Positions 2,190-63,379 of a stretch of 64,000 nucleotides of DNA are shown here, one piece after another; position 1 is the stretch's first letter; the number at the start of each line of letters is the position of its first letter. Source of the stretch: Phaeosaccion multiseriatum (Eukaryota > Protista > Ochrophyta, other classes); NCBI GenBank assembly GCA_965112735.1, contig OZ218953.1, positions 1,674,001 through 1,738,000 on the forward strand. The letters are read 5' to 3'. The notes under the pieces are model-generated. The model had not been told where the DNA came from. It did not search any database and worked only from the letters and a program-made list of their open reading frames with translations. Made by a program: the position numbers and the translations under genes.

Positions 2190-2223
<34 letters not shown>

Positions 2224-3257: not shown

Positions 3258-3539
3258 ATTCTTTTCTTTTGCTGGGATTTCTTGTCTCTCTCTCTCTGTC
3301 TCCCTCAACCAACTGTAAGTGAACGACCAACTGCCTCAGGGATGGCTGCATCATTCATCATTCCATGCGAGCAGCTCCGATTTATGTTTTATCCACGTAC
3401 AATGATATTCCCTGCGATCACAGTAGTTGCAAACACCAGCACTATTCAATGCTCCAAGGCGAGGCGGTGTTTGCAGTGGGGAATGGTTGAAAAAGGAAGG
3501 AGCAGGCGCTCTCTGACCGAGACGCACGATGCGTAGCTG

Positions 3540-5494: not shown

Positions 5495-5755
5495 CAGCAG
5501 AACAGCTTTTCGCCCTGTGTAAATTGTCCTACTACATCAATTTTAAATTAATTTAAGTATCGAAGTTACCCTTTGTGTGTGTCTCTCACTACTCACGATT
5601 GCCATAAACGATTGCCGTTATCATCTTCTATTCTATGTGGTGTGCTGCTGCTTCTAATCAACAAGCTTATCACTTCTATTTCGGGTTACATGATTCCCAA
5701 GAGAACTCAGTACCGGGGAATTTCTCCGGTGCCAGAGGCGAGGCCTGCCGCTGCC

Positions 5756-14960: not shown

Positions 14961-17900
14961 TTATGCGTCATCCGCTGAAAAAAACGGAGCGAGCGAACTC
15001 CATTCCATGAATGCAGCCGATTCATCCTGCTGCGGCTGCGGCTGCTGCTCAAGCTGACTTACACCACTAGAGAACGGCCCTTGCAAAAAGAATGAAGCTG
15101 CTGCTGCTGCTGGGCGTCCGAAGATCGATGCTTCGCCCTCGACTTTGGTGCCTACCTCCTCCTTCTCCTCCTCCTCCTCCTCCTCCTCCGCAGCACCGCG
15201 CTGCGGCTGTATCACCAACTGCTGCTGCACTGGTGGTTGGTGCCCACGAAGCCTGGGGCTGGCCTGCTGCTGCTGCTCATGACCAGTGCCAGAGCTATGG
15301 CCGTATCTATGCTCTGTATGTTGCTGTTGTTGCCAGTAGCACCCCGCCTGCGGCTGGAGCGAAGAGTCTGACGAACGACGAAGTCGCTTGGGTCCGCTTG
15401 ACTTGTCGCCTGCACCGGCGCCATCATCAGCACCAGCTTCCACATCAGCCGACGATGGGATCGAGGACACGGCGTACCGTTCGTCCACCCCCCCCCCCCC
15501 ACCGCCCTCCCTTGGCGACGTCGCAGGGGGGGGCAACGTTCGTCGTCCTCGGTCGAGTACGCTTCGCTGCATGTGGTACTGCTGCACGGGGCGAGGGCTC
15601 AGTGAGACTTTCATGGTCATGCCCTCCGGTGCTGTGGCGGTCGGGCCCCCCTTCATCAGAGCAGAGGGCCGGACTCCGAGCTGGCTCGTAGTGTGCCGCC
15701 GCGCCTGCTGCTGTTGCATGTGGCCCAGTGGTGGTGCCGCGATGGAACGATTGCCACTCTTGGTGCTGCTGGAGGGGCCTGAGGCGGCGGAGGAGGAGGA
15801 GGGAGGAAGATCCTGTTCCGGAGGGGCGCCGGCAGCAACGCCTATGGGGTGGCGGGACGGGGACGCGGACCCGGGGCGCAGCGGTAGTTTCGACGCCCTC
15901 CGTCGCTGCTGCTGCTGCTGCGGCGGCGGCGGCGGCGGCGGAGGAGGCGGAGGAGGATGAAGAGGAGCGCCGAACGGTGGGGTCACAGCAGCACGATCAG
16001 TTGGTGAAACAGCAGCGGCATACCGCCCGACGTTGCCAGCTCCCGGCTGCCTGGGCTGCGGGGCGTGTGGGCGCGTGCTTGGCCTAAAGAGCCCCCCGAG
16101 CGGGTGAAGCCCGCCGCCGGAACGGGGTGAGGATGACGGCTCCGCGTGAGTGCTGCGAATGAGGCGATGGGGAGGGCGCTTACGCCACTCGCTCTCCCCT
16201 CCTGTCGCATCTACCTCTCCCTTCTCTGCCGCTGCTGCGACTGGGGGTTTGCCGCTCCCCCCTTGCTGCAGCTTCCGCTCCTGCTTCCGCTGCTGCTGGC
16301 CGCGGCGGGGGGTGTCGTTGGAGTCTTGTGCCATGCTTGCTCCCCACTCGTGAAGAACGTCGATGGGGTTCAGGCCGGCGTGAAGGTCGTCGATCGCCTC
16401 CGCCCCTTCAATACGCTGGAAGCTGTTGTTGCGTTTTAATCCCTGCGGCGGTGGCCCATATGACTGCTGCTGCTGATACGGTGCCCTGGGTAAGCCGCTA
16501 CCGCCCCCGCTTCTCAGAGCGTCGAAGCTATTCTGATGGCTTAGGCTCCGCGCTGCTGCTGCTCCTCTGCCTTGGAGAGTGTCGAAACTGCTCCTGCGTG
16601 GGGGAAGGCTCTGCTCCGGTGGTACCGTGGGCTGATACCGGCGTTTCCTACGCCTGCCACCCGCCCTCGATTGCCTCTCGTCTTCCTTCTCCTCTTCCTC
16701 GTCCCCCCCATCTGTCCACTCCTTCTCCTCCTCCTTCTCCTCCTCCTCCTCCTCCTCCTCCTCCTCCTCCTCCCCCTCCTCAGCGGCAAGTCTCGCTGCT
16801 CCACCTCGTCGGGCCGAGCGACCACAGAAGCCAGAGCTACCGAGGCCGGTGATGCTGCGACGAAGCAACACCGGCACGGACGCCATGCTGCTGCTGGCAG
16901 TGCTGCTGTCGCAATCCTCGTCGGGAAAGTCCGTCCAAGCACTGCCGAGCGAAGAAGAAGACGACTGAGAGCGAGTGGTCGCGACGGGGGGCCCTCTCCT
17001 CAGCGAGACGGCCTCGATCTCCCTCACTGCCTTGGCTGCCGCTGCGGCCGCGGCGCTTGCACGGAAAGAGGCGGTACTACCGCCCCAAATTCTGTCTCCA
17101 CTGCTGCTGTTGCCGTTGCTACTGCCGTCACCGCTGCTGCTACTACTACTGTCATTGGTGTTCATCCTCTTGCTCCTCCTCTGCTGTCCTGTCGAGTCTT
17201 GCTCTGGCCGCTCCAACCTGAGGCCTACGCCCAGCGACGCAAACAAGCTACCGCTGCCGCTGCTGCTGCTACTACTGGCGGTGATGCTGTTACCGGAAGT
17301 GCTAAGATGATTGCTGCTGCCCTGGCGGCGAAGGAGCGCAGCATCGGCAGGCTGGCCTGAGGAGGAGCGGGGCATCATCGCGTACTCGCTTTTGTCCATC
17401 CTTGCGGTTCCTCCTTGTCCTCCTCCTCCTTCTTCCACCTGCTCGTCGGTGCCTCCCTTCCTCTTGCACTTTCTGCGGCTGACATATTTCAGTACCTCGC
17501 CAAGGTCATAGCTTGTGCTTTTGCTGCCGGTACTCCTCTCAGAAGAGAGAGGACTGTGTGGGGGGCGGGGCAGGTGTGGTGGGGCGCAGAAGAGCAGCGT
17601 GGGGGGCATGGTCAGGGTGACGCAGAGTCAGGTCACCAGCCACGCAGGTTGGTTATTTTTCTGAAAGCAGGGAAGAAGGTGGGGCAGACACTGAGCGACG
17701 CAAGCAGGCAACAAGGGCTGGGTAGCCCACCCCAGTGCTCCTGCGGCCTGCATTGCTGCGGCCGGCCGAGTGAGGCGCACTACCTGACTAACTGCGGTAA
17801 GGAACCCCAGCCAGGCCAGCTGCCTGCCCTGCTTGTAGTCCCCACCTGGTAGTGCTGCCGCCTCCGCCGTCTTGAAGCTGGCACCGCCGCAAGGCCTCCT

Positions 17901-18721
17901 CGTTGACGAACACGCCTGGACTCGAGGTGCCCTTCCCCTCCGTCTTCTTGAAGCCAAAGTAGTTGAGCTGGCGCAGGAACGAGGTGTACTTGCTGTGGGA
18001 GTAGTACTTGCCCAGCACGTCCGTCTCCATGACCTGAGGTTGGTGCACCCGAATGCAGCCTACGGTAGCAGAGCAGAGCGAGTGAGAAGGGGGTGAAGGA
18101 GGAGGGGTGCGCGAGAAGAACACGCATACGAATGGGGGAGGCAGACAAGCAGCGGCATTGAGATACAGAGGCTGAGGAACTAGAAAGAGGCTCGGAGGGA
18201 TGAGAGAACGACGTGGAGCAGAAAACCACAGCTGTGCAAGCCATGAGCGGCCAGAATGGAGGAAGAGAAAGAGGGGGTGGGGGGGATAATCGTGGGGGGT
18301 AGGACAGAGAGCGAAGTGAACGTCTTCAGAGGACAGTCGATGGGAGAGGGTGGGCCGGAGTGGAGGACGAAGCGCCTGGCATGTTTGCAGTGCGGTGGAT
18401 CCAAACCAGCGGGTTTGAGTGAGGCCTGTGTGGGAGGAGGCAAGCGGATGCGCCCTCCTCTCAGTTGCTCTGCCCCGCCCCGCGTCCTCTCGCTCTCTTC
18501 TACTCTCTCCCTTGCCTCTTCTCTCCCTCGCTCTCAAACACACCTTGCGACTTGTCCCACACCACGATGCTGGTATCTTCTTGCAGCAGGATGGCGTAGA
18601 GTTTACGGAGAAAGGCACACGACTGAGTGGGGCCTTCTTCCTCTTCACTTCTTCGCCTCCTCTTCGCATTCGTAGTCCTCTCCACGTTCCGGCGAGGAGG
18701 ACAAGTCCTACGCTGCTCCAT
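14961..18721 (-). CDS. Heat-shock-factor (HSF) DNA-binding domain protein with long low-complexity C-terminus
   Basis: [21 protein letters not shown] (18.6 kb) spliced to [25 protein letters not shown] (18.0 kb), then a ~850-aa disordered terminal exon (poly-S, E, P, Q). Confidence 0.88.
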
Positions 18722-47400: not shown

Positions 47401-47747
47401 CCCCTCTCCCTCCCCTCCCCTCCCCCACTACACAGACCAGGACGGAGACGTGTCTTGCCTAGCCCAGACCCTTCAGCCCGGCTCCTCCCTGGTGGCCGCC
47501 GGGTACTGCCTCTACAGCAGCTCCGTCTTCTTCACACTCACCATTGGCAATGGCGTCAATGTGTTTACACTGGATAGGCAAATTGGAGAGTTTGTGTTGA
47601 CCAACGCCAATATTCAAATCCCCAAGAGGGGCAAGATTTACTCCTTCAACGAAGGTAACAAGATGACAGAGGAAGATTGAGACACGGGCCTATGTGTATG
47701 ATGGATGCAGTAGGGAAGCAAGCAAAGTGGCAAAGGCCTTGCGATGA

Positions 47748-47781
<34 letters not shown>

Positions 47782-49034
47782 GGTGGTGGCCCTGTCCCCG
47801 AAGTCACGACGTTTCGTCCCTTTACCCTGTTGCCCCGAACAGCCAACCGCTGGACATGGGACAAGCCCCTGGCCGAGTACGTGACTGCGATCCAGACGGG
47901 TGCAGGCGAGACGAAGCAGCAATACGCCGCCAGGTACATCGGCTCCATGGTCGGGGACGTACACCGCACTCTGCTCTACGGAGGTACGTTGGTTGCATTG
48001 GGGGGGGGGGGGGGGTGGAGAGAGGAGCCTGCTGCCATTGACGTACGATTAGTAGCAGCAGCAACAGCAGCAGTTGGTGATACCCCCCTCACTCACCCAC
48101 GTACCCACCGTAACCACCAGCTACCAACCCTTCCCTACCTGCCCCTTTACAACAACAGGAATCTTCGGCTACCCCGCTACCACCAAGAACCCGGACGGCA
48201 AGCTCCGACTCTTGTACGAGGCGGCGCCCATGTCCTTCCTCGTGGAGCAGGCGGGGGGCACCTCCCTCACCGGCAAGAACCGCATCATGGACATCAGCCC
48301 CACTGTGAGTGCCAGTTTGAGCTGCAGTTTGAGTTGCAGTTTTATCGCATCTAATCCAAGTGTGATCCTCCATCCCTTCTTCTCGTGCGTTCCTGTCTTC
48401 TATTGCCATTGCATCCTCCTCTTCTCACGTCCCCCACCCCCCCCTCCCCTCCTCTCTTCTCCTCTCCTCTCCCCTCCCCTCCCCCCCTCCCCTCCCCTCT
48501 TCTCCCCTCCTCTCCCCCGCCCCCCTCTCTCCTCTCCCCTCCCCTCCCCCCCTCCCCTCCCCTCCTCTCCCCCGCCCCCCTCTCTCCTCTCCCCTCCTCA
48601 CCCCCTGCCCTCCCCTCCCCTCCCCTCCCCTCCCTTCCTCTCATCCCACCATCCACTGCCATCTAACCTCAGAGCGTGCACCAGCGAGTGCCCTGCATCA
48701 TGGGCAGCACAGAGGACGTCATGGAGGCACGCAAGTACTACGAGGTGAGAGGGGGAGAGGATGGCAGTGGAAGGGAAGGGATGGGATGGCAATGGAAGGG
48801 ACAGACAGACCGGCTCTGCCTCTCGTTTCTCTCCCTCCCTCTCTCTCCCTCTCGAGCGAGAAGCGCCCCGTCATGCGCTTCCCTCTCCATGGAAGGAAGC
48901 TTGTTCTCACCATTTGTTGTGCCGTCTACTGCCATCCACTATCATCTCCTCCTTCCGTGCAGGCGTCCGATGACCCGGAGCTCATTGCCCGGTGCCTCAA
49001 GCGTATGTCGAAGACCGCCAAGGCCACCGCCTGA
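44434..49034 (+). CDS. FBP: Plastid fructose-1,6-bisphosphatase (class I)
   Basis: Leader with EASAF motif; ACKTIAS; [11 protein letters not shown]; ASEEED; [26 protein letters not shown]; redox loop [17 protein letters not shown]; [18 protein letters not shown]; [21 protein letters not shown]. Confidence 0.96.
46551..47056 (+). repeat. 110/130-bp tandem repeat (4+ units) spanning an FBPase exon end and 5' splice site
   Basis: Units start at 46551, 46661, 46791, 46921 and 47031 (partial). They differ by one 20-bp tatgtcagtgactatgtcag subunit. Confidence 0.95.
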
Positions 49035-49800
49035 GTACTTACATCATATGGAAATATGCCAGGCGCCACAGCTACCCCGCCTCTTTACGATGGATTGCTT
49101 TTTACTCCTGTCCCTTTGCACGGGAAGGGAGGGAGAGAGGACGAAGGGAGGGAGATAAGAGAGGGAGATAGAGAGAGATAGAGAGAGAGTGAGAGAGATA
49201 GAAGAGAGGGAGAGAAACTTACTTTTGTTTGAGTTCTTTTAGTTTACTCACGCCCGAAGTGTGGTACCGTACAAGTTTTACACCTAGATACAGTACATGC
49301 CCTAAAACCAACATACGGAGTCTGAAAATTGCAGGGTATGGAGCAAGCTCGCCGTCTGCTGCTGTATATGTGAGAGCAGTGTGTGTCAGGTGTGGGTGCC
49401 CGCACCGCCCAGGGTGGAGAGAGGGGCGGGGGCGGCAGAGGGGAGAGAAAATGGTGGCCCATGGCACAGTTTGAGTTTCATTCTGAAGTTTGTTGACCCC
49501 CTGACCAAATGTGAGGGTAATCAGCTTGGAGGCTTGGCCCTCAACACGCCGCCCCTGTCAGGGTCTCCCTACACCCTATACCCTATACCCTATACCCTAT
49601 ACCCTCTATGTGCACCCCTCCTCCCTCTCTCCTGCTTTCGGTGATACCCCATACAATGTACATACCCTACCCTACCCTACCCTACCCTACGCTCCTCCTC
49701 CTCCTCCTCCTCCTCCTCCTCCTCCTCCTCCTCCTCCTCCTCCTCCTCCTCCTCCTCCTCCTCCTCCTCCTCCTCCTCCTCCTCATGCACACAGTATGTT

Positions 49801-50062
49801 TCAAAGTCTCTGCAGCAGGTGTGATGAGGTGATGGTCACTCAGCCAGCCAGGCAGTGCCATCCACTGCCCTCCACTACCATCCACTGTCATCCTCTACCG
49901 CCCACTGCCATTCACTACCATCGAGGCCACAGAGACGCTCCCCTTGACGGCGTAGAGGCCCACGAGATGGTCACATTTGGCGTGCATCTCGGGGCGGTGA
50001 GACACCACTGCCAGTAGTGGGGAGTCGCACACACACACACACACACACGCACACACACACAC

Positions 50063-50095
<33 letters not shown>

Positions 50096-50548
50096 CAGCG
50101 GGAGGGGAGATGGTGGTATATAGTCAAGAGATGGGCAGTAAGTCTTGAGTAAGTGGTAGGACGAAGGAAGGCACTGAATGGCGCGCTGTCACGCACGACC
50201 GAGGAAAGAAACACATCTGCTTTCATCGTCACTCACTCACTCACTCACTCACTCACTCACTCACCGAGGATCTGCGCGGAGGTGGAGCCGAGCCTGCTGG
50301 CCGTGCTGCCGCCCTCCTCTCCTGCTGCTGCCCCTGCTGCCCCTGCTGCCCCTGCTGCCCCTGCTGCCCCTGCTGCCCCTGCTGCCCCTGCTGCCCCTGA
50401 TGCGCAGCAGCGAATGAGCTCCGCAGCCAGGCTCGAGTTGCGCGTGTCCAAGGCCGCATCGACCTCGTCAAAGATGAACAAGGGAAGCCTGGACACGCAC
50501 TGCAGAGCCACGAGGAGCGACAGCCCGCACATCGCTTGTTGCCCCTGT

Positions 50549-50598
<50 letters not shown>

Positions 50599-51671
50599 CA
50601 AACGCCACACAGCGTTTTGTCACTGGGAAGAAGCGAAAGCTACGCTGGAGCGAGATACTACGGACCAGCAGCGGCCCTCTCAAGAGCCACGGTACCCCAG
50701 CCCCCTTTTCCTTCTTTTCCTCCTTTTTCTCCTCCTCTCTCTCTCGCTCCCTCACCCCTGACAGAAGCCCCTGCTTCCTCCAAGGCTTGCCCCTCTCGGG
50801 CCGAGCCAACAGCTCCAGACCCTCTCTGAAGAGCGAGCCTCTCTCTTTGGAGAACGAAAGGTAGCAGTCCCCAGCCTATACGGAAGCAAACAGATGGAAG
50901 GAGGGAGGGGGGAGGGGGGAGGGGGGGCCGAGAGAGAAGTGATGAGACGCTATCGAGTCTCACTTTACAAACGAACAAGCCAGTCCTTCTCTCCTCGAGT
51001 AGTCCCACTTTACAAACGAACAAGCTAGTCCTTTCTCCTAGAGTGCCGCAGTTGCCGACGAGTGAGTCAAGTGTGTGGCAACTCCTGCTGCTTCAGTTCT
51101 GCTGACTGGCTACCCCCCCTCTCCCTTTCCTCCCGTGTCCAGCACAAAGTGCAAGCAATCAATCAAGAAAGCAAGCCCACTGGTTGCTGGTAGTACTCGT
51201 CTCCTCTCTAAGAGTAATATAGTGTCTACCCCCCACCAACCTTGCCGAAGGACAAGCCTGTCTCTGCCCCTGCCCTCTCTCCCCCTCCTGTGGCACCGCC
51301 GCTGCTCGTCATCGACTTGGCCTCCTGCACATCGAAGTCGACAGAGGGCAGAGGGCAGAGGCAGGCAGTGTACAGCCAACATAGAAGGGACCCAATCCAT
51401 GCACGCACACACATGCGCGCAACACGCAAACACACACATGCACGCACGCACGCACGCACGCACCAGGCGTGAAAGAGCCCCATAGATCCTCCCAATCTGC
51501 GCATTGAGGTCTGTGAGGAAGGCCTTTAATCGGCTGAAGCGCTGCCCCTCTAGGGCCTCCACAGTGCTCCACAGAGCACGCTCTTTGCGCTGACACTCGG
51601 CCGCCTCCACGGAGAGAGACTCCTTTTTGTTTAGAAGGAGGAGGGGAGGGGAGGAAGAGCCATCAAGAATT

Positions 51672-51728
<57 letters not shown>

Positions 51729-54287
51729 CTGCACAACAACGCATGTGCAGAAGCGAGCACAAAAGACGAGAGAAGACTAACTCTGAGATGCTTGGCAGAT
51801 TTGACAGGCGCTCTACATCGCCACTTCATGCGGATCCTCTCTTCCCCTCATACCTGCTCCTCAACGAGTCTGGCGTGCTCTTTCAACGCCTGTCAGAGCG
51901 AAGGGGCCACCGGGGAAGGATATTCAGGTTCAGGGCGGGCGAAGGGGAGGGGGAAAGAGAGAGAGCGAGAGAGCGAGAGAGGGAGAGGGAGAGGGAGCGA
52001 GCGAGAGAGAGAAGAAGATGAGAGAGAGGGGATGAGGGAGAGAGAGCTCAAACATAAAAAACCTAAGCTCACTAAGCAGCCCTGAGGGATGTGTGGGGGA
52101 CGGGCATCCTTCCTTCCTTCCTTCATTTCCTTCCTTCCTTCCCTCCAACCCCCCCTTCCTTCCTTCCTTACCTCATGGTCGATGCAGTCTCGCTGCCCCT
52201 TGATCTCCTTCTCCTGTGCCGTCAGCAATCGCACCTCCTTCGCCACCTCTGCCTCAAAGGCGCGTCTCCCTCTGCGTGCGTACAAGTCCCGCAGCTTCTG
52301 CTCGCGCCTCGCTACTTCCTTTCCACCTACTTGTTGCCGACTCCTGTCCTCCTTTCGCCCCCTATCAACGTCCTTCTCCGCTCTCCCTCCGCGTCCTCCT
52401 CCCCCTCTTCCTCCTGTCCCCTCCTCTTCGCTAGCGGAGCCATCGCTCCTGCAAATCATCATGCTGCTGACCACGGTGTCGTCATCACGCTCCTCTTGCT
52501 TCTCGCTCTCCTCCTCCTTCCTCACACTTGCCAACTCCTTCTGCGCCTCCTTCGCCTCTCTCTTGGCACTCGCCTCCCCCCTGTGACACCTCTCGAGCTC
52601 TGTGGTGAGCTCAGCCCGTTCCGCGGCCGCCGCCGCCAGACTCCGCTTGGTCTTCCGAAGCCCCGCCGAGATCGAAGTGGTAAGGTCTAGCGAGGAGAAG
52701 AAGAGTGACATTGATGAGATGGTATAGATCTACGAGCGATTCCGCACGTAAGCCCGCACACACGCACGCATACACGCACGCACTAACACACACACAAGAA
52801 AAGACCCAGTCGGAAGGAAGCCTGCCTTCGTCTCTTCGTCTTCCACCCATCCCATCCCATCATGGTTTTGGTCCTCCTCCCTCCGTCTGTCGCTCCCCCG
52901 TTGCTTTTCCTGACTCTCTCACCTAGTGCACTCTGAAGCCGACGCCCCTCCTCCTTCAGGTCCTCTTTACCCTCCTTTAGCCGCTCCAGCAGCCTCTCTT
53001 CCTCCTGTCCCCAAGCCTTCGCCTCCACCTCGGCCCTGTGTAGGCGCTCCGTACGCGCTGGGATGTGGCGTTTCACCGCCGACAGCGACAAGCGGGCATT
53101 GAGCAGGTCCTTCCTCAGCGCTTGCTGCTCTGCCTTGATACGGGCGAGCGTCGAAGCATGCGACTCTCTCTCCCCCTCGACTGCTGTGGACTCCCGCTTC
53201 TTCGGCTCCAGCAGTAGCAGTTGCTTCCGTTGCTCCTCCTCCTTGCGCTTCACGGCCACGAGCAGCGCAGCCCCCCCCTGGGCGGCATCCTCACCCTCAC
53301 CCTGTGTGCGCCTCTCTTTGAGCTCGACCAGTTCGGCAAGAGCGCTCCTCACCGCGGCCTCGGACACTCGAGTCGCCTCTTCCAATCGAGCAACAAGCGC
53401 ACCAGTACCGCCTCCTTGCTTCTGCTGCTGTTGGCGGTGGTGCTGCACATTGTTAGAGACGTTGTCGTAAGACTGCTCCAACTCCTCTAGCTCGATCTGC
53501 ACGGCCGACAGGCGCGCCAGCAGCGAGTCAAGCGTGGCGCGGCCTTCTCGGTACTCCTCTGCCATGCGCTGCCATCTCTCCGTCAGCCGAGAGGCCTCTG
53601 CTGCGGCAGCCACGGCTCTTTCTTGTCGCTCCTTCGCTGTGGGCCTCTTCTGCTGTACCACCAACTGCTGCTGCTGCTGCTGCTGGAGGTCATCGCCACT
53701 GTTCTTCTTGAAGGAAGCTTCTCCCTGTAGGGCGAACACCTCTCTGTGCCTGTGATCGCCGCTGAAGCCTGCTTGCCGGGATAGAACCGCTGCACCGTTG
53801 GGGAGAGAGAGACAGAGATAGAGAGAGAGAGGGAGAGAGAGAAAGAAAAGCCTGAATATGTCATTTTGCACACAAGGGGGGCAATCGCACGCACGCACTG
53901 ACCCACTCTTCTCCCAGCCTCAAAACACTACCCCCCGCCGCTGCCACTCGACCCACACCCCCTCAACACAACATGCTCACCTCGCTCTCCGTCAGCCTTG
54001 AGTATCTCCCCGTTTAGAGAGATGATGTTCGGCAGCGAGCGTTTCCCTATGCCGCCCCCGTACCCCTTCCCGTCATGTTGTCGCCCCCTCCTGTGCTGTT
54101 CACGCAGCCGCAGAGCATCCGATCTGGCACCGCCGAAAGGAAGTACAACAGTTTGAAGTTTCGTTTTCGCCCAGCACAGGGAGGAGTACCATTTGGGTGG
54201 GTGGGGTTGGGAGATGGATAGGGGTGTTGGCTTTATTTTTCTCTCACAGCAGTCCCAGACCTATCGCCCGCACCGGCTCCCTCCCTC

Positions 54288-54355
<68 letters not shown>

Positions 54356-57300
54356 AAACACACACACACACACTCACACACACACTCACACAAGCACACA
54401 CGCACACACGCACACACCTGTCCCGGACCAGCAGCCAATGTGCCAGGTGGCGCTCAAAGGCCAAGAGAACATGAGGAGAGGCTGCCACAAAGTCCAGCAG
54501 GGATCTGCCGTGCTCCAACTCCCGTCCGACAGCGTCGATGGCAGCAGACGGAGGCGCCATACCTCGCCCGCTGGTGATCACCCCCTGTGTATGCGGAGCG
54601 GCATGAGTAGGCAAGAGGGAAGGAGAGCAAGAGAGCAAGATGGTAAGATATGATCGATCCACGCTTTGTGAGGCACCATTCATCAGGACAGCGGAACGCG
54701 TGACTGCAGGAAATGTCGAGGGGTACTCAGCTCTCTCTCTCGATGTCTTTCTCTCCCTCTCTCCCTCTCTCTCTCAGCTCTGTCAGCCAACACACTGCAC
54801 CGACCGCACTCACTCACGCGCTTACCCACCCTCTGCTGTGCAGGCCCCTCCTGATGACCGACAAAGGTGCCTCCCCCTAGCCCTGGCCTCGGGCCGAGCT
54901 CTTGAAGTATGTCGCACCGGAGGCTGGACAACCGAAGCTGACGCCCGAGACGGATCACACGCTCGCCATCTGCGCGAGTGGACACCACAACTGGGGGGGG
55001 AGGGGTGGGGGGGCAGCGCACACGCACACGCACACGCACACGCACACGCACCCAGCCACCAACAACAAGCAGCAAGCGTTTAGCTAGCTTGAGGGAGAGG
55101 AGGAGGATGGCTCCGGTCATTAGCCCGACAGGGGAGGGGCAGGGGAGGAGGGCGAGGGGCGCGGGGCGCACATTCATTCAACTCGCGGCATTGTACTCAA
55201 TGAAGTACCTGTGGATCGCAGCAGTCCCGCGCTCCGCAAGACTTTGTTGACCGCACATTGATCGCCGAAAGACCCTCCACTTTCCCCGCTCTTGCTTGCC
55301 GTCCTGGCTTTATCCGCGAGCAGTGACCGCCCCAGATCCACCAGAAGCCCAAGCACCCCCGCCACGCCTCCATTTTGTCCGTCCACCATCCCCCCCTCCT
55401 CCTTCTGCTCCTCCTGTTGTAGGCTGCTGACAAGCTGTCGCATCGTAGCGAGGCGTTGTGCCTCCGTCTGCTGACCTGCCGATCCGACTCGCCCTCTCAC
55501 AGCCCACCCGCCCTGACCCCTCCTCACCCTCCCGCCCTCGGCCCCCTCCGCCCCCTCCTCCTCCTCCTCCTCCTCCTGCTGCTGCTGCTGCTGCTGTTGT
55601 TTCTGCTCTCGTGCGTGGTCTTGCCTCATATCATGGGCTTGCTGCAGTGCAGCGCTTAGACTGGCGTTGTGCTCCTCTGCCCTCTTCAGTCCAGCCTGGA
55701 GCTTACCGCGCTCTTCAAGTAGGAGGGTCCGCCTGAAAAGCAAGACAAAGCAACGCAAAGCAAACTAAAGCATGTCAGCCGTTGAACAAGGACGGGTTGA
55801 TTGCTTGACCGACTGACCGGCTGACCGACTGACCGACTGACCGACCTTGCCTGTGTACGACGGACCTCCTCCTTGGCGAGAGACAGACGCTCCTCCGCTC
55901 TCTCCTGCCTGTGCTCAGCGATTGCAAGCGACGCAGCGACGGGGGAGGTGTGAGGGGAGGGTTGATCGGCGCCTTGCTGAAATGCAAAGCATATGGGGCT
56001 CGACTCAGACGGATGGGCGAACGCGTTCTGATCATGATGGAATGACGACAACAAGGCCGCTCCACAGTCACCAAGACAATTCATATCTGGGCTCTCTGTG
56101 CAGCCGACCACCGATCACACCTGCTCGTCTCCCTCTGGTGCGTGGCTGCTGCCGCCTTGATGGATCTGTCCAGCGCAGCCCTCTGTCTGAGTATATTTGC
56201 CTCTCCCCCTGCCTTCTGCAGCCGCTTCCGCAACACGGCAAGTTCGCCCTGCAGCTCTGGGGAAGGAGGAACAAAACAAGTGCGCGAGGTGCACGCACAC
56301 ACACACACACGGGCGCACGCACCCACATGCACCACAAATACACACATACGCAGGAGCGTAAGCACGCATGCGAGTCCGTCGATGTAGAGAGCTTTTCAGC
56401 AGATGAAGCCCTTCGTTCGACTTTGTACTACCCCTGCTTTTCTCGAGCGACAGATTGAGTACCTTCGAGCTTGCGAGCTGCCTCGGGGTTTCGGACCTTG
56501 GGCTGCGAGGCCGCGAGCGCCTTCTCCCGTTTCACTTCAGCGGTGGCAATGGACGCCTGTGGGAGGAAGATTCGGGGGCGGACGGACGAACGGACCGACC
56601 GATTGATTGACTGACTGACTGACTGAGGTTTTCTGTTGGGCGCATCGTAAGTCATCTCTTGTTCGTCAACAAGCAAAAGGAAGTTATCACTCGGTTGACC
56701 TCTTGACCCACCCACTTAGCACACGCCTCAGCCAGTCCCGCCGCGGAGCCAGTCAGGTGCGCGAACCACTCTCCCACACTCGCAATCAACTCTTCACTCA
56801 ACTCAACGAAAACACGCAATCTCCACTGTGCAACCAAAAACAGTCGTATGTACCGCACTCCCACTCTTCTTGGCACTCTTGTCGTACCTGTCGCTGGAGA
56901 GTCTCTTCTTGGAGGTTCCAGCGCTGCACGGAGCTCTCGAGATTGAGCAACTTGGCCTTGTCCTCCGCCAAGAAGGCTCTTAGCTTCTTTTGGGCCTTGG
57001 TATTGCTGCTCTTGCTGCGCCGGCCCTAGGAAGTAGTTGGTTAGATAGTATAGCAGGGTACCAGAATGAAAGAAGTCGAAACAAAGAGTCGCAGCAGCAA
57101 CAATGAGGGAGAGTCCCCACGACAAAGTCAGGGTTTCGGGGCGGGGGGGGGGTGTAGTGAGGTGAGGGGATAGAGGAGCTATGTTAGGCATGGTGACCAG
57201 TAGTGCAGTGTTCGCTTTGCTAGCTAGACGCAGCCGACCACAGCCACAGTCAATGAATGGCAGTGGATGGGGATGAATGGATTCGGTTCGCCTACTCACT

Positions 57301-59133
57301 TGTGCAAGCTTCGCCTGATGCTCCCCTGTACTTGCGCGCAGGTCCACGACTCGAGTCTGCGCCTCTCGCTCTCGAGCTTTGCCCTGCTGGAGGGCCGCTG
57401 CCTGCTCAGCAGCTTCTTCGGAGAGGGGCTTGTTGTCCTCCTGCCCAACACGCGCACACGCACACGCACACGCACACGCACACGCACACGCACACGCACA
57501 AGAGGAGAGAGCAATGAGGCCACCGCCGAGCAAGCATGCCCTCCTCATGCCTTCTCTGTCTGTCTCCCTCTCCCTCTCCCTCTCCCTCTCCCTCTCCCTC
57601 TTCCTCTTCCTCCCCCCCCCCTCCCTCTCTCACTCCCCCTATCTTTCTCTTGCCCACCCATCAAGCCGCAGAAGCCGGCCCATATGCCTGCCCATATGCC
57701 TGCCCATATGCCTGTCACCCCCCCCCCCCCCCGCCCCCCTCATGCCTCTGCTCGCACCAAGCACACACGCACCTCTTTCCGACGGACTTGAAGGGCGAGG
57801 CTCTTCCCCTCCTTCTCCAGCGCCTCCAGCTTGGTGCGCGCCTCCCGCTCAACAGCCTCCGCCCCAATTCTCCTCATCGCCCACACCTTCCTCCGACTGC
57901 TCCGAAGCTCCTCCTCCGCCCTCTGCAGGCGCTCGAACTGTGCGACTGCGGGGGAGAGGAGGGCTTGGCGTGCAGCCGCCTAGTTGGTCAGTTGGTGGTA
58001 CAGTGTTGTGGGGTATACACATGGGCCATCAAGCATGCCCGCCGGCCAGGAAGAGGAGGCTTAGTGTCAGGATACACAGGGCGAGGAAGGAGCAGGGAAG
58101 GGGCAGGGAAGCGCAAGGGAAGGGCAAGGAAAGGGCACGGGATGTATATCTGCTTGACATGATGCCTGCTGGACACATGTCATCCAGTGTCATCCTTACC
58201 TGCTGGACCTTGACCTTGAGGGAGATTCCGAGGGCATGCAAGTCGTCGATATCGCGATTGGCCTCCACTACGCGCAGTCTCGCCTCCTTCCAATCAAGTT
58301 AAGACCACGTGTCAAACGCCCAGGGGAAGAGTATATGTGCGTGTTAATGTGGGAGATGTATCAAGAAGAGTGTTCATTCGTTGCGCGACACACCAGCCCA
58401 GATGGGGTGTCCACAGTAAGCGAGCACAGCGTCAGCCACCATCACCACAGCCTAATTCGCAACCCGCAGTCAACCCGCCGCCACTTTTCTGCCTCCTTGC
58501 TCCAGCCCCGGAGCAAGCTTCCTTGTTGCCTGCGTTGCCTTTGTTGCCTTTGTTGCCCGCCTGTGCTCTGCTGTGCTCTGCTGTGCTCTGCTGTGCTCTG
58601 CTGTGCTCTGCTGTGCTCTGCTGTGCTCTGCTGTGCTCTGCTGTGCTGTGCTGTACTATACTGTACTCACCTCAGTGCCGGCAATCTTCTCGAAGAAGTT
58701 GAGCAGGGACAGATTGTCCAAGCGCTGTGCGACGGACACCGCCCCCTGCCGCGCCACGTATGCGTCCGTGTTGCGCAAGTCGAACCCCGCAAAGGCGTTG
58801 AGTCGAGTCATCATGCCTCCCAAAGAAGTCGTCGCCGCCGTCCCTGCCTTGTTGTTGCGTCCTCTCTTCGTTCCCACGCGCACGCGCCCTCCTGCGCACG
58901 CTTCTGCTGCTACTCCGGCTGCTGTATCACCAACTGCTTCTATCTCATCACCAGACACTGCTCCTGATCGTGGCTCATCCGTCTGACCTCCCCCCCCCCC
59001 TTCCATCTTCCTCGACCTCTTTCTCTTTCTCGGAGGAGAGGCACATGCGGCGGCTGGTGGCGCGGGGGCGGGAGTCCCGGGCACCAGAGCCTCCTTGGGG
59101 CATCCACCGACCCCTCCATCCCCCTCTTCGCCC

Positions 59134-59191
<58 letters not shown>

Positions 59192-59918
59192 GCTGCTGTT
59201 GCTGCTGCTGCTGCTGCTTCTGGTCCTTCTCCTGCTGTTGCTCCTTCTCCTGCTGTTGCTCCTCACTCCCACCTTCCCCACCATCGTCCGTGAGCCCGAT
59301 CTTTACCCCTCGAGCTACTTCTTCTCCTTCGGCCCCCCAGCCGAAGTCCTCCTCCTTGAGCGAGTAGACGGACTTTCCGGTGTCGTAGGACAATCTCCGA
59401 CCCGCCTCCACTGCTGCTACGAGCCTGCCCGCACCCCACTTCTCAAACCGAACCACAACGGAGGCTTCGACAGAAGCGCCGTTTTCTGTCTTGTTGCTCC
59501 CTCTCTGGCGCCTCCTCTGTTGTTGTTGTTGTTGTTGTTGCTCTTCCTCCCACTCCTCTTCGTCGTCGCCGTCATCCTCCTCACCATCTTGGTTGTTTTC
59601 CTCGTCGCTACAAGCATTGACACCGTCGTCAGCTCCGCCCCCATCTGCTCCTCTCGAAAGGAGATCATTGTGCGCCTTGACGAGGGCCTGGTTCACCACC
59701 TCCTTTACCGATGCACCTCGCCTGCCACTCCCGAGCACAAAAAGTAAGCCTTCGATCACTGCGGACTTGCCCGTGCCGTTTGCCCCCAAAAGACAGGACA
59801 GGGGCGTGGACCGTTGTTGATCCTGCTGCCGCTCCTCCCACCCAGGAAGTAGGTCGATGCTGCATCTATCCTTGAAGCTAAGAAAGCCCTGGAGCTCCAC
59901 GCGACGCAGCAGAAGCAT
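49801..59918 (-). CDS. Divergent SMC-family (ABC-type ATPase) protein
   Basis: [10 protein letters not shown]; Walker [11 protein letters not shown]; Q-loop YVARQG; coiled coils; hinge-like [12 protein letters not shown] ... [14 protein letters not shown]; signature LSG-GQQ; Walker B/D-loop [12 protein letters not shown]; H-loop [11 protein letters not shown]. The stop is either 49801 (spliced) or 49895. Confidence 0.88.
58561..58650. repeat. 10-bp tandem repeat (ctgtgctctg)x9, first SMC intron
   Basis: Perfect tandem array. Confidence 0.95.
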
Positions 59919-60577: not shown

Positions 60578-63379
60578 ATGCTGCTCAAGATCAGAAAGAG
60601 GTTGGGCAACAACCGCAACACTGTGGACGGAAACAGCAGCCCACCACCTCTGCAGCAGCAGGAGAGCGAGGACTTAGCTTCGCCTACAGCAAGTGGAGGG
60701 AAGAAACCCAGCAGCAGCAGTAGCAGCAGCACCAGCACCAGCAGCAGATGGGGTGGTGTGGGTGGGCGCTTTGGAGGGACCGGTGGACAGGGTCATGTTG
60801 GGGGAGGGAAAGAAAATGCCACTGCGACTACAGCTGCTGATCCAGAGCTTCCTCTGAAGGAGGAGAAGGAGCAGGGGGCGGCCAAGAAGCCAACAAACGG
60901 CTCGGCAGGCTTGACTCCCTCACAGCGCCTGCTAAAGAGTCTGCGCCTGTCCCCTTGCGCGCTGGAAAGCGTCGTAGAGAGTCCTTCGAGCTTCGTGGAC
61001 GGAGAAGGAGTGGCACTGGATGTCGCGAGTCCGCAAAGCTCTGGGAGTGTCTTCACCGTCGACAAGGAGAAAGGGGAGGAGCAGGAGCAGCCGCAGGAGC
61101 GCAAGGCTGGCGAGGCGAGAGATGGTCTCAGCGAAGATGGCATCTTTGGGACTACCGACGACCCTACTCCTACCACGGTGGACTCGATGCTGCCTCTCAC
61201 CACGCACGAACAGAGCGACCACGTGCTACAGTCTTTCTTCTCCACTTCGCCCCCTCCGCACCCTCCTCCTCCTCCTCCCCCCCCTGCTCCTCCTCAAGCC
61301 GCTGATGCGGCAGTCATCATTGGGGGCGGGCCGGGGGTGTTCAACAGTACAGGCGGGACTCGAAGCCTCCCGGGTGGGGGCGGACTCCTCGACCCCGCCC
61401 GCCGGGGAAGGACACTCACCAGCGCGGTGGACTTCCGCGGACGCTTTTCAGAGTCAGGTATGCATGGATGTCGGTCAGAAAAGCATGGCTGACGAGGACA
61501 CACAATTAATCGAGCTCTTCCCTCCAGCTGCCTCACACCGCCCCCTCCGCTTCCAACACCGTGTGTCGTGCTGCTTCTCGGCCTCACGTGACGCCGAACC
61601 TACCCATGAACAACAGAGAAAAGCACGACAGCACCAGCAGGAGGAATAGCAGCAGTTGGTGATACAGCAGCAGCCGCAGCAGCAGCAGCAGAAGCAGCAG
61701 CAGCGGGTGGGGGGAGCGACTCGCTCGCGGCGGGGGCAGCAGGCGTAGGCGGGGACATGGGCCCAGGAGGGAGGAGGTACACCGTCATGTCACTGGATAT
61801 TCCCTGCAGCATCTCCACCACGTCCTCGGTGGACGACAGCAGTGGGCCCTACGGGTACCTACAGACCGGCCTGAGCAGCAGCGTGCTCGGCACCCCCTTC
61901 AACAGCACAGGAGGAAACAGCAGAACGGGTGGTGGTGGAGGAGGGGGGGGTCATGGTACCAGCGGTATCGCACACAGCATGTCGTTCTCGTCGGTCGCCT
62001 CTTCCCCCGTGGGCAAAGCTCACCACCCTCATAGCCAGCGACGGGCAGGAGGGGGCGCGGGAGGGGGAGGGCAGCAGGGCAAATCGGGAGGGGTGGGCAG
62101 TGTCCTGACGAGTGGTCTCTTCTCTCCATCCAAGAGGAGCCGTGGCGGCGGGGCGGGGGCGGGGGCTGGGACTCCTGTTGGCTCCCCCCGGGGGGCGTAC
62201 CTCTCTTCTTCCTCCACTTTGGTGCGATCCAGTTCTGTTTTCTCTTTTGGAAGGAGTGGGGGGGGGGGGGGAGGAGGTTCTGCCTTTCCAGGAGGAGGGG
62301 GAGGAGGAGCAGGCACGTGTAGCAGCAGTAGCAGGGGCAGCAGCAGCAGCAGCAGAAGTAACTTGCTGAGACAGCAGTCCTCGTCGTCGTCTTCGAGCTT
62401 CCACCGCAGCTTCATTCTGGAGACGCAAACGAGGAAGTGGCAAACACGCACGCTTGCCTCATTCTTGCCGGACTTCTTGCTGCGTGACTTTCTGGAGAAC
62501 CACGCCAAGCAGGGCTACGTGTGGGGTCAGGAGCCGGGCATGAAGGAGTGCCATGGCGCCATCGCCATGATGGATCTGTGTGGCTTCACAAGACTGGCGG
62601 AGGACCTGAATCAACTCGACGCGGGAGGGGGGCTCCTGGCACCGCCGCCGCCCCTGAGCGGAGGGGATGGGGCGGGAGGAGGCGCAACCGTTTCAGCCAC
62701 GGCTGCTGCTACAGCTGAAGCGACAATGGCAGCGGCAAGGACAAGGACGAGAGTTGGGGGCACGGCCGGCGACCCCTCTTTTGTGTCTGCTCGTGCTGCA
62801 GATGGGATAGTGGAGGAGAGGGCAGCGGGACAACAGCAGGGCACCCCGGGGGGCAAGAGGAAGCGGCGCAGGAGTAGCGAAGGCTCCCGGGGAGAGGAGG
62901 AGGAGGAGGAGGAGGAGGAGGAGGAGGAGGAGGAGCAACGGGGAGAGACAGCAGCGGAACAAGCCAGCGACCCCCCTTCGGCTGTTGCATCCCACTCAGC
63001 AGCCGCAGCAGTTGGTAATACAGCAGCAGCGAGTGGTGCTAGTGTCGCAAGCAGCTCCATGGGGTGCGTGGGAGGAGGTGGTGTCTCTTATGTGTCCTCC
63101 TCTCGCCCGGAGAGGGTAGGGTCCAGACGCCGCAGTCTGAGTCTTTCGCCGAGCAAAATTGCCATTTGTCGGAGTGGGGTGGGCGGCACATTGGAAGTTT
63201 GTTGTCCGCCGGTGGTGGTAAGTGGTACCTCGGATAACAACGAGAAGGCACAGCACATCGAGCCACCACCCCGTGAGAGTCACAGAGAGCGAGCAGACAC
63301 ACTGCCTTCACACGAGGGCCAGTTACAGAAACAGCAGCAACGGCGGCCTCAGATACCACTCCCGGATCAGGGGGTGATA

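What the first reader, a model, noticed from the sequence alone, without database searches (positions are those of the whole stretch)
49801..59918. Full-architecture SMC protein that does not resemble canonical SMC1-6
Seen: all ATPase motifs are intact ([30 protein letters not shown]), with two coiled-coil arms and a degenerate hinge. The usually well-conserved contexts differ: KSA rather than [30 protein letters not shown] before the signature, [14 protein letters not shown] after it, and weak hinge glycine motifs. Established: eukaryotic SMC1-4 heads are highly conserved, and SMC5/6 use DEFD/DEIN-type Walker B variants. Inference: an additional SMC1-4-related subfamily with unknown partner and kleisin, i.e. 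possibly an uncharacterised chromosome-organising or defence complex.
Basis: partly seen in the sequence, partly recalled or inferred. Interest (0 to 1): 0.8.

Follow-up and report, generated by a model that had tools for sequence, protein, structure and literature searches.

The report
Extra fast-evolving SMC protein gene
The window holds an intact 18-exon gene for a chromosome-folding (SMC) ATPase from an undescribed, fast-evolving family found so far in brown algae and their relatives, which looks like a seventh eukaryotic SMC type beside the six textbook ones.

Summary
On the minus strand, 59918 to 49895, 18 exons joined by 17 GT-AG introns give one open frame of 1,700 codons. It has the full SMC layout: Walker A, Q-loop, long arm, hinge, long arm, signature motif, Walker B/D-loop and H-loop.

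The protein is not a lone oddity. It belongs to a conserved family with orthologues in seven brown-algal species, plus three unplaced environmental or transcript sequences.

In conserved head and hinge columns the family is only 22-25% identical to any canonical class. Orthologues within SMC1, SMC2 or SMC4 keep about 50% across eukaryotic supergroups.

Maximum-likelihood trees (three data sets) make the family monophyletic and place it inside the eukaryotic SMC1-4 radiation, as sister to SMC1+SMC4. By similarity SMC4 is the closest class. A sister relation to SMC4 is not rejected (AU p=0.17).

I could not search this genome for its canonical SMC4. "Additional" therefore rests on indirect evidence: published Ectocarpus inventories, canonical SMC4 in diatoms, and the family's fast rate. 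No RNA data were available. Partner, kleisin and function are unknown. I found no description of the family in the searchable literature.

The scan noted a second odd SMC elsewhere in this genome, a possible partner.

The parts
49895..59918 (-). Whole coding region of the SMC-family gene: 18 exons, 17 GT-AG introns, 1,700 codons plus a TAG stop at 49895-49897.
   Evidence: Stop-free pieces, splice-site enumeration, in-frame assembly.
58671..59918 (-). Exon 1: the N-terminal half of the ATPase head (residues 1-416).
   Evidence: Pfam AAA_23 29 bits and SMC_N 25.5 bits. Canonical N-head HMM 30.6 bits with no shuffle hit. 43% identity to the Discosporangium orthologue over residues 2-80.
59763..59786 (-). 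Walker A / P-loop GANGTGKS. It is followed by A instead of the usual N.
   Evidence: The family has GKSA/GKSS where SMC1-4 and prokaryotic SMC have GKSN.
58803..59633 (-). Low-complexity insert of about 280 residues inside the N head. It has acidic runs, about 40 Gln in a row, and a basic NLS-like patch (PRKRKRSRK). Brown-algal orthologues lack it.
   Evidence: It may be partly intronic; there is no RNA evidence.
58740..58754 (-). Q-loop (ARQGA).
   Evidence: It aligns with the invariant QG of all SMCs.
55360..58286 (-). N-terminal coiled-coil arm (residues 417-815; exons 2-9).
   Evidence: 67.8% E/K/R/Q/A/L and 0.7% Pro. The AlphaFold model of family member P0052 has long helices in the matching stretch. 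Junction choices within this arm are uncertain.
53985..55359 (-). Hinge domain (residues 816-1021; end of exon 9 to exon 12). Landmarks: [41 protein letters not shown]. The terminal GG motif is replaced by G-E-R.
   Evidence: Pfam SMC_hinge matches the orthologues at 44 and 37 bits. The AlphaFold hinge of the Discosporangium orthologue matches solved SMC1 and SMC4 hinges.
51554..53984 (-). C-terminal coiled-coil arm (residues 1022-1500; exons 12-15).
   Evidence: 65.8% E/K/R/Q/A/L and 0.7% Pro; helical in the model of P0052.
49898..51553 (-). C-terminal half of the ATPase head (residues 1501-1700; exons 15-18).
   Evidence: Canonical C-head HMM 95.4 bits, E 1.5e-31. Pfam SMC_N 42.6 bits.
50536..50785 (-). 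Family-specific PWR motif and the ABC signature LSGGQQ. The signature is split by a 211-nt intron between the two Gly codons.
   Evidence: W, R and LSGGQ are invariant in all family members.
50446..50478 (-). Walker B and D-loop ([11 protein letters not shown]).
50321..50403 (-). Low-complexity repeat inserted in the C head between the D-loop helix and the H-loop.
   Evidence: After that call no letters of these places were sent to any search tool, and local alignments used a model without them.
49985..50007 (-). H-loop (VSHRPEM) at the start of the last exon.
   Evidence: SHRPE is conserved in the brown-algal orthologues and in P0052.

Best explanation
The gene encodes a working SMC ATPase of a lineage-restricted, fast-evolving family. 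I call the family FAM here. It is present in brown algae, in this brown-alga-related ochrophyte, and in three unplaced sequences.

FAM is an offshoot of the SMC1/SMC4 branch, the SMCs whose head cap binds the C-terminal domain of the kleisin. It is closest to SMC4 by similarity. It most likely exists in addition to the canonical SMC1-6.

Shown:
- Full SMC architecture.
- All catalytic motifs intact and invariant across the family.
- A canonical hinge fold in an orthologue.
- A position inside the eukaryotic SMC1-4 radiation but outside each class.
- Divergence at the level seen between classes.

Inferred:
- It dimerises through its altered hinge with an SMC2/SMC3-type partner. This could be a canonical one, as DPY-27 pairs with SMC2 and SMC1-beta with SMC3, or a dedicated one such as the second odd SMC noted elsewhere in this genome.
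- Its heads engage on ATP and are bridged by a kleisin.
- The complex entraps or loop-extrudes nuclear DNA for a specialised task: a variant condensin- or cohesin-like role tied to the life cycle or meiosis, or silencing of foreign or integrated DNA.
- Basic NLS-like patches and the lack of an N-terminal transit peptide suggest that it is nuclear.
For: Gene integrity: 18 exons, all introns GT-AG, no internal stop.

SMC head and hinge homology:
-.
- Family profile against solved structures: SMC4 105 bits, archaeal SMC 95, SMC2 about 78, SMC1 about 74, SMC3 about 59; no SMC5/6 and almost no Rad50.
- Folds: the hinge model (pLDDT 77.8, core above 90) matches the SMC1 hinge 6wg4_A (E 2e-10) and chain 3l51_B of the mouse condensin hinge, which I take from memory to be SMC4 (TM 0.81).
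- The full-length model of member P0052 shows head, arm, hinge, arm, head. Its best match is yeast Smc4, 6yvu_B (E 6e-32).

Family membership:
- The exhaustive HMMER search with exon 1 found only brown-algal relatives below 1e-10.
- Word searches added Ectocarpus (two species), Scytosiphon, Hapterophycus, Nemacystus, Cladosiphon and Discosporangium, plus the unplaced P0052, P0053 and P0017.

Trees (LG+C20 PMSF):
- FAM is monophyletic, 100/99.
- FAM+(SMC1,SMC4) is supported at 97/93, 99/95 without the two longest rows, and 99/97 with heads only.
- AU tests: SMC1-4 as a clade excluding FAM is rejected (p=0.02). FAM+SMC1 gives p=0.04. FAM+SMC4 is not rejected (p=0.17).

Divergence: FAM is 22-25% identical to every class, against about 50% within SMC1, SMC2 or SMC4 (SMC3 41%) and 24-31% between classes.

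Indirect support for 'additional':
- Ectocarpus is scored present for SMC1-5 (PMC4647503, Table S1).
- Ectocarpus has 7 proteins with an Smc hinge domain, against 2-4 in diatoms (PMC5485032, Table S5).
- Diatoms, in the same phylum, have a canonical SMC4.
Against: - I could not search this genome or a brown-algal genome for a canonical SMC4. Coexistence is therefore not shown.
- The published 'present' calls for Ectocarpus SMC4 give no accession and could refer to this very gene.
- SMC4 is the best-scoring class in every similarity test, and FAM+SMC4 is not rejected.
- FAM rows are long branches (window protein 1.6, P0052 2.1, P0053 2.4 changes per column), so the basal position may be a long-branch artefact.
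- Only two SMC1 and two SMC4 sequences were available, none from a stramenopile, and there were no SMC5/6.
- No partner, kleisin or function was tested.
- There is no synteny with Scytosiphon.
Confidence: 0.65

Rival explanations
1. It is this lineage's own SMC4: the single condensin subunit, evolved beyond recognition in brown algae and their relatives. It would not be an extra gene. The other odd SMC in this genome could then be an equally diverged SMC2.
For: - SMC4 is the top canonical class in the profile search of solved structures (105 bits), in the big-database profile search (fungal SMC4 167 bits, Histomonas SMC4 133 bits) and in Foldseek (6yvu_B).
- W sits six residues before LSGG, and the Walker B context PLY-x-MDE-[IV]-D is as in SMC4.
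- The AU test does not reject FAM+SMC4 (p=0.17).
- A second non-canonical SMC is noted in the same genome.
Against: - Identity to SMC4 is 25%, against 50% between a fungal and a parabasalid SMC4.
- All three trees put FAM outside SMC1+SMC4 (92/88, 84/67, 99/95).
- Diatoms of the same phylum keep a canonical SMC4.
- Ectocarpus has 7 hinge-domain proteins, more than any other stramenopile in the table.
- The altered hinge glycines and GKSA would have to be tolerated in an essential mitotic complex.
Confidence: 0.17
2. It is an ancient third member of the SMC1/SMC4 branch that split off before SMC1 and SMC4 separated (before or near the last eukaryotic common ancestor). It would survive only in ochrophytes and a few other lineages.
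For: Taken at face value, the trees place FAM as sister to SMC1+SMC4, with 92/88 to 99/95 support for SMC1+SMC4 without it. P0052 and P0053 branch deeply and come from organisms with very different base composition.
Against: - It requires loss in nearly all eukaryotes.
- FAM branches are very long, which is the typical cause of a false basal position.
- Only four SMC1/SMC4 sequences were sampled.
- The source organisms of P0052 and P0053 are unknown.
- The exhaustive search with exon 1 found nothing outside brown algae, though that exon is the most divergent part.
Confidence: 0.1
3. It is a prokaryote-type SMC acquired by horizontal or endosymbiotic transfer, for instance for an organelle.
For: After the family itself, the first word search listed only archaeal and bacterial SMCs. 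Archaeal SMC scores nearly as high as SMC4 against solved structures.
Against: - That ranking is an artefact of the word index. The family's NGAGKS words are shared with prokaryotic SMCs, not with the eukaryotic GPNGSGKSN.
- Trees nest FAM within the eukaryotic SMC1/4 branch. A tree with SMC1-4 as a clade excluding it is rejected (p=0.02).
- The gene has 17 spliceosomal introns.
- There is no N-terminal targeting extension, and NLS-like patches are present.
Confidence: 0.02
4. It is a decaying or non-functional gene copy.
For: Very fast evolution, large low-complexity inserts, a weak hinge signal, and no RNA evidence.
Against: - The frame is open across 18 exons, with consensus splice sites.
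- Every catalytic residue is kept and is invariant across family members from very different genomes.
- Orthologues are retained across the deepest split of brown algae (Discosporangium against the rest).
Confidence: 0.03

Closest known systems
SMC4 (CAP-C/Cut3), the condensin subunit whose head binds the kleisin C-terminus
   Same: - Same overall architecture and the same branch of the SMC tree (SMC1/SMC4).
- Best-scoring class in sequence-profile and fold comparisons.
- Trp plus a basic residue six positions before LSGG, and PLY-x-MDE-[IV]-D at Walker B.
   Different: - Only about 25% identity in head and hinge columns, against about 50% among SMC4 orthologues.
- GKSA/GKSS instead of GKSN, and LSGGQ instead of LSGGE.
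- The terminal GG of the hinge is replaced by G-E-x.
- Large disordered inserts in both head halves.
- Falls outside the SMC4 clade in all trees.
- Partners unknown.
Lineage-specific paralogues of canonical SMCs: C. elegans DPY-27 (SMC4 paralogue of the dosage-compensation condensin; see PMC11142195) and vertebrate SMC1-beta (meiotic cohesin). Their properties as stated here are from general knowledge.
   Same: A taxon-restricted, faster-evolving copy of an SMC1/SMC4-type protein that coexists with the canonical gene and gives a specialised complex by pairing with a canonical SMC2 or SMC3. This is the working model proposed here.
   Different: Those paralogues still group clearly within SMC4 or SMC1, whereas this family is as far from SMC4 as SMC4 is from SMC1. 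Coexistence with the canonical gene and the identity of the partner are not shown here.
Archaeal/bacterial SMC of the SMC-ScpAB complex
   Same: Same architecture. Profile scores are nearly as high as for SMC4 (Pyrococcus SMC 95 bits). Homodimerisation is a formal possibility for an SMC without a known partner.
   Different: Trees and the AU test place the family inside the eukaryotic radiation. The gene is intron-rich and nuclear.
SMC5/SMC6 and Rad50
   Same: Coiled-coil ABC ATPases of the same superfamily.
   Different: There was no SMC5 or SMC6 hit, and only marginal P-loop hits to Rad50, in sequence searches of solved structures. The hinge is of the SMC1-4 type. There is no zinc hook.
SMCHD1-type proteins (also noted in this genome by the scan)
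   Same: They carry an SMC-type hinge.
   Different: SMCHD1 has a GHKL ATPase and no ABC head. The present protein has both halves of a bipartite SMC ABC head.

Membership tests
SMC proteins in the strict sense (SMC1-4 / prokaryotic SMC type) | N-terminal head half with Walker A and a Q-loop | tested here: met
   GANGTGKS and ARQGA are present. Canonical N-head HMM 30.6 bits with no shuffle hit. Pfam SMC_N on exon 1 alone scores 25.5 bits, below the cut-off of 40. Orthologue P0001 scores SMC_N 91.7 bits.
SMC proteins in the strict sense (SMC1-4 / prokaryotic SMC type) | C-terminal head half with the LSGG signature, Walker B DE, D-loop and H-loop | tested here: met
   [17 protein letters not shown] and VSHRPEM are present. 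Pfam SMC_N 42.6 bits, above the cut-off. Canonical C-head HMM 95.4 bits.
SMC proteins in the strict sense (SMC1-4 / prokaryotic SMC type) | Central SMC hinge domain (PF06470 fold) | tested here: met
   Direct evidence is weak: 10.5 bits against a shuffle maximum of 6.0.
Evidence through the family is clear:
- Family hinge HMM 45.7 bits.
- hhalign of family against canonical hinges gives 99% probability.
- Pfam SMC_hinge scores 44 and 37 bits in the orthologues.
- The AlphaFold hinge of an orthologue matches solved SMC1/SMC4 hinges at target-normalised TM 0.75-0.81.
SMC proteins in the strict sense (SMC1-4 / prokaryotic SMC type) | Conserved glycine motif (G-x5/6-GG) at the hinge dimer interface | tested here: not met
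   The window protein reads [11 protein letters not shown]. The family reads G..F....GE[VI], where canonical SMCs have G......GG.
SMC proteins in the strict sense (SMC1-4 / prokaryotic SMC type) | Two long coiled-coil arms of matching length between head and hinge | tested here: met
   The arms are about 400 and about 480 residues, rich in E/K/R/Q/A/L and with 0.7% Pro. The AlphaFold model of member P0052 has continuous long helices on both sides of the hinge. Antiparallel pairing itself was not examined.
SMC4 | Groups within the SMC4 clade in a phylogeny | tested here: inconclusive
   FAM falls outside SMC1+SMC4 in three trees. FAM+SMC4 is not rejected (AU p=0.17). Only two SMC4 sequences were available, and FAM rows are long branches.
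SMC4 | Orthologue-level conservation of the head and hinge (about 50% identity; GPNGSGKSN, LSGGEKTL) | tested here: not met
   25.4% identity to SMC4, against 50.4% between the two SMC4s. The motifs differ.
SMC4 | Pairs with SMC2 and binds the CAP-H kleisin C-terminus | not testable with these tools
   No multimer prediction, and no access to the genome's SMC2 or kleisin genes.
SMC1 | Groups with SMC1 in a phylogeny | tested here: not met
   The tree with FAM+SMC1 held together gives AU p=0.042. Identity is 23.6%.
SMC2 / SMC3 | Groups with the SMC2/SMC3 branch | tested here: not met
   FAM joins SMC1+SMC4 with 97/93 to 99/97 support. SMC2+SMC3 form the other branch.
SMC5/6 | Sequence similarity to SMC5 or SMC6 heads and hinge | tested here: not met
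   There is no SMC5/6 chain among the 42-49 significant hits to solved structures. No SMC5/6 sequences were available for the tree.
Prokaryotic SMC (horizontal transfer) | Groups with bacterial or archaeal SMC to the exclusion of eukaryotic SMC1-4 | tested here: not met
   Rejected by the AU test (p=0.02) and by the tree topology.

The most novel reading that the evidence does not exclude
The family is one subunit of a fourth eukaryotic SMC complex. It would pair through its rebuilt hinge with a dedicated SMC2/SMC3-type partner, possibly the second non-canonical SMC noted elsewhere in this genome, and use its own kleisin. It would perform a lineage-specific task such as restraining integrated giant-virus DNA or chromatin control specific to a life-cycle phase. 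In the strongest form of this reading, the lineage predates the SMC1/SMC4 split.
Probability: 0.15. Interest if true: 0.85.

Novelty: new variant of a known kind. Interest (0 to 1): 0.62.

Why it matters
Eukaryotes are taught to have six SMC proteins in three complexes, fixed since their last common ancestor. Known extra copies (SMC1-beta, DPY-27, plant duplicates) are recognisable members of one of the six classes.

This family is as divergent as a class of its own, yet it keeps a complete and conserved ATPase. It has a rebuilt hinge interface. It has been retained across brown algae, an independent multicellular lineage with UV sex chromosomes, alternating generations and widespread integrated giant viruses.

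If it is an extra gene, it points to an uncharacterised SMC complex. That could be tested directly in Ectocarpus, where genetics, Hi-C and life-cycle transcriptomes exist. If it turns out to be the only SMC4, the finding is still notable, because condensin would be evolving about five times faster here than anywhere else sampled.

Tried and rejected
- phmmer of exon 1 against solved structures returned only poly-Gln matches.
- ESM Atlas look-ups were generic ('SMC') or the machine was busy.
- The look-up of sequencing runs found only DNA-like holders from one coded organism and no RNA run.
There is therefore no expression or splice evidence. 
- Horizontal transfer from prokaryotes was suggested by the hit order. 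I rejected it as a word-index artefact, and on the trees and AU test.
- Rad50 and SMC5/6 were rejected for lack of hits.
- The metagenome scan gave only distant (27-45% identity) SMC genes, most likely ordinary prokaryotic SMCs, and no new family members.
- The alignment-based word search used words of its first row only. It returned canonical SMCs useful for the tree but no new members.
- Synteny with the Scytosiphon orthologue: none. Intron positions in the C head are not shared.
- Searching papers for the two run accessions of P0052 and P0053 gave nothing, so their organisms stay unknown.
- Counting class-diagnostic residues gave too few informative columns (SMC4 2, SMC3 1).
- Six literature searches found no paper describing this family.
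Full report
**Observation.** The region is part of a GC-rich (about 58-60%) eukaryotic sequence whose introns are full of GT/CA microsatellites. On the minus strand, stop-free coding pieces run from an ATG at 59918 to a TAG at 49895-49897. Enumerating GT/AG pairs that keep the frame gave one continuous model of 18 exons and 17 GT-AG introns (113-588 nt), coding for 1,700 residues.
- Walker A GANGTGKS (residues 45-52).
- Q-loop ARQGA (389-393).
- Hinge (816-1021).
- AGDCYLSF...PWR (1531-1563).
- LSGGQQ (1568-1573), split by an intron.
- [11 protein letters not shown] (1593-1603).
- VSHRPEM (1664-1671).

Pfam SMC_N matches both ends. HMMs built locally from 28 canonical SMCs score the spliced protein at 30.6 bits (N head) and 95.4 bits (C head), with no hit among 200 shuffles. 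The hinge is indeed degenerate: 10.5 bits against the canonical hinge HMM (best shuffle 6.0) but 45.7 bits against the orthologues' hinge. The two arms are about 400 and 480 residues, coiled-coil-like in composition and almost free of proline. Exon 1 carries an insert of about 280 residues of low complexity, including about 40 Gln and a basic NLS-like patch. The C head carries a second low-complexity insert.

**A rule followed.** My local alignments used a model with those codons removed. No RNA run was on record. The gene model therefore has no transcript support, and several junctions inside the arms are choices among near-equal candidates.

**The protein is not an orphan.** An exhaustive HMMER search of 1.84 billion representatives with exon 1 found only two proteins below 1e-10, both from brown algae, plus one short fragment. 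Word searches starting from these extended the set:
- Brown algae: Discosporangium mesarthrocarpum, Ectocarpus sp. 12 and sp. 8, Scytosiphon promiscuus, Hapterophycus canaliculatus, Nemacystus decipiens and Cladosiphon okamuranus.
- Two deeper-branching sequences from Logan assemblies: P0052 on an AT-rich 3.9-kb intronless contig, and P0053 on a GC-rich intronless 7-kb contig.
- A fragment from a JGI metagenome (P0017).

All share family-specific features:
- GKSA/GKSS after the P-loop.
- TR-x-D[GA] and a conserved Cys in the hinge.
- G-E-[VI] in place of the hinge's terminal GG.
- GG-x-C-[YF]-L before the signature motif.
- An invariant W-R six residues before LSGGQ.
- SHRPE at the H-loop in most members.

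The orthologues reach Pfam's thresholds for SMC_N and SMC_hinge. The window protein is 35% identical to the brown-algal members in conserved columns. Discosporangium is 55% identical to the other brown algae. This fits a genome outside the brown algae proper. Earlier scan notes call it a brown-alga-related ochrophyte.

**Which SMC is it?**
- *Similarity.* A family profile against all solved structures hits SMC4 best (105 bits). Next come archaeal SMC (95), SMC2 (about 78), SMC1 (about 74), Thermotoga SMC (71) and SMC3 (about 59). SMC5 and SMC6 are absent, and Rad50 appears only through its P-loop. A profile search of the large database ranks a fungal SMC4 (167 bits) and Histomonas SMC4 (133 bits) above all other non-family hits. 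These scores are far below what orthologues give.
- *Identity.* In 505 head and hinge columns the family is 25.4% identical to SMC4, 23.6% to SMC1, 22.7% to SMC2, 22.1% to SMC3, 23.8% to archaeal SMC and 23.0% to bacterial SMC. Two SMC4s from a fungus and a parabasalid share 50%, and SMC1 against SMC4 is 31%. The family is thus as far from each class as the classes are from one another.
- *Trees.* Maximum-likelihood trees (36 sequences, LG+C20 PMSF) recover the accepted backbone: SMC2 with SMC3, SMC1 with SMC4, eukaryotes next to archaea. They make the family monophyletic (100/99) and place it as sister to SMC1+SMC4 (97/93). The result holds without the two longest rows (99/95) and with the heads alone (99/97).
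- *AU tests.* They reject a tree in which SMC1-4 form a clade without the family (p=0.02). They marginally reject a union with SMC1 (p=0.04). They do not reject a union with SMC4 (p=0.17).
- *Motif detail.* The Trp position before LSGG and the PLY-x-MDE-[IV]-D Walker B context also resemble SMC4.

I conclude that the family belongs to the SMC1/SMC4 branch. Most probably it is a fast-evolving derivative of SMC4. Its basal position may be a long-branch effect, since the window protein's end branch is 1.6 changes per column.

**Structure.** An AlphaFold model of the hinge of the Discosporangium member (13-row alignment, pLDDT 77.8, core above 90) has the canonical SMC hinge fold. Its best matches are the SMC1 hinge of human cohesin (6wg4_A, E 2e-10, target-normalised TM 0.75) and chain 3l51_B of the mouse condensin hinge, which I take from memory to be SMC4 (TM 0.81). 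A full-length model of P0052 (46-row alignment, pLDDT 70) shows an N-terminal head half, long helices, an alpha/beta hinge, long helices and a C-terminal head half. Its best Foldseek match is yeast Smc4 (6yvu_B, E 6e-32). These models are of relatives. The window protein could not be submitted whole because it is spliced.

**Additional gene, or the lineage's only SMC4?** This is the key open point, and I could not test it directly. The indirect evidence favours an additional gene:
- A published inventory scores Ectocarpus siliculosus as having SMC1-5 (PMC4647503, Table S1), although it gives no accessions.
- A SUPERFAMILY census gives Ectocarpus 7 proteins with an Smc hinge domain. That is the most among 13 stramenopiles, against 2-4 in diatoms and 3 in Nannochloropsis and Aureococcus (PMC5485032, Table S5). 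SMCHD1-like genes, also noted in this genome, may account for part of the excess.
- Diatoms have a canonical SMC4.
- The family evolves roughly five times faster than canonical SMC4, judging from path lengths. That would be unexpected for an essential mitotic subunit.

I put about 0.65 on 'additional, lineage-restricted paralogue'. I put about 0.17 on 'sole, highly diverged SMC4' and about 0.1 on 'ancient third member of the SMC1/4 branch'. Transfer from prokaryotes or a dead gene get very little.

**How it most likely works.** Shown: a complete ABC-type SMC head whose catalytic residues are invariant across very divergent members, two long arms, and a hinge of canonical fold with an altered dimer-interface motif. 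Inferred from what is established for SMC proteins:
- Dimerisation at the hinge.
- ATP-driven head engagement through Walker A and the partner's signature motif.
- Bridging of the heads by a kleisin.
- DNA entrapment or loop extrusion.

As an SMC1/SMC4-type protein it should contribute the head whose cap binds the kleisin's C-terminal winged helix. It should pair with an SMC2/SMC3-type partner. That partner could be canonical, as with DPY-27 and SMC2 or SMC1-beta and SMC3 (general knowledge; PMC11142195 for the nematode case). It could also be dedicated: the scan's note of another 'SMC ATPase that does not fit SMC1-6' on another piece of this genome is an obvious candidate that I could not examine. 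NLS-like basic patches and the absence of a transit peptide suggest nuclear localisation. The biological role is open. Candidates are a variant condensin or cohesin for meiosis or a life-cycle phase, or control of integrated viral DNA.

**Novelty.** Six full-text searches found no paper describing this family. The most recent survey of eukaryotic SMCs discusses only SMC1-6 (PMC8665677). I rate it a new variant of a known kind.

**Surroundings.** A fructose-1,6-bisphosphatase gene on the plus strand ends about 1.1 kb from the SMC stop, in convergent orientation. A 304-codon Ser/Gly/Pro-rich ORF with no Pfam match starts 660 bp upstream on the other strand. The Scytosiphon orthologue spans 16.7 kb and has different neighbours.

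Noticed in passing
window 47677-48745 (+): Exons of a fructose-1,6-bisphosphatase gene (Pfam FBPase_C, 40 and 68 bits). The gene is convergent with the SMC gene and ends about 1.1 kb from its stop.
   Followed up: partly
window 14961-18666 (-): An exon with an HSF-type DNA-binding domain (39 bits, 17788-18666), followed by an 881-codon open frame (14961-17606). That frame is almost entirely low-complexity (Ser, Gly, Gln, Glu, Pro runs) and has no Pfam match. It is probably a heat-shock-factor-like transcription factor with a very long disordered tail.
   Followed up: partly
window 60578-61489 (+): A 304-codon ATG-started ORF, rich in Ser/Gly/Pro and without a Pfam match. It is divergent from the SMC gene, with only about 660 bp between the two start codons, so the two may share a promoter region.
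   Followed up: partly
window 49680-59300, many places: The SMC gene is riddled with simple repeats: (GT/CA)n in most introns, a CAG run coding about 40 Gln in exon 1, and a long GAG/GAA-type run (49680-49835) just 3' of the stop codon. Coding low-complexity inserts sit inside both halves of the ATPase head, and the brown-algal orthologues lack them.
   Followed up: partly
L002 (Logan SRR30872635 contig, 7,016 bp), 1004-6545: The most divergent family member, P0053, is a single 4.6-kb intronless ORF. A YccV-like (hemimethylated-DNA-binding) gene lies only about 110 bp away on the other strand. This points to a compact, GC-rich, intron-poor eukaryote, so the family is not confined to intron-rich brown algae. 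The organism is unknown.
   Followed up: partly
literature: PMC5485032 Table S5: Ectocarpus siliculosus has 7 proteins with a SUPERFAMILY 'Smc hinge domain', the highest count of 13 stramenopiles (diatoms 2-4). The paper also mentions unnamed 'Smc-containing proteins' induced by sexual cues in a diatom. Neither point seems to have been followed up in print.
   Followed up: partly
tool behaviour: The word-indexed protein search ranked prokaryotic SMCs ahead of eukaryotic ones. The cause is that the family's P-loop words (NGAGKS) are shared with prokaryotes. With an alignment as query it seems to have used words of the first row only. Hit order there should not be read as phylogeny.
   Followed up: yes
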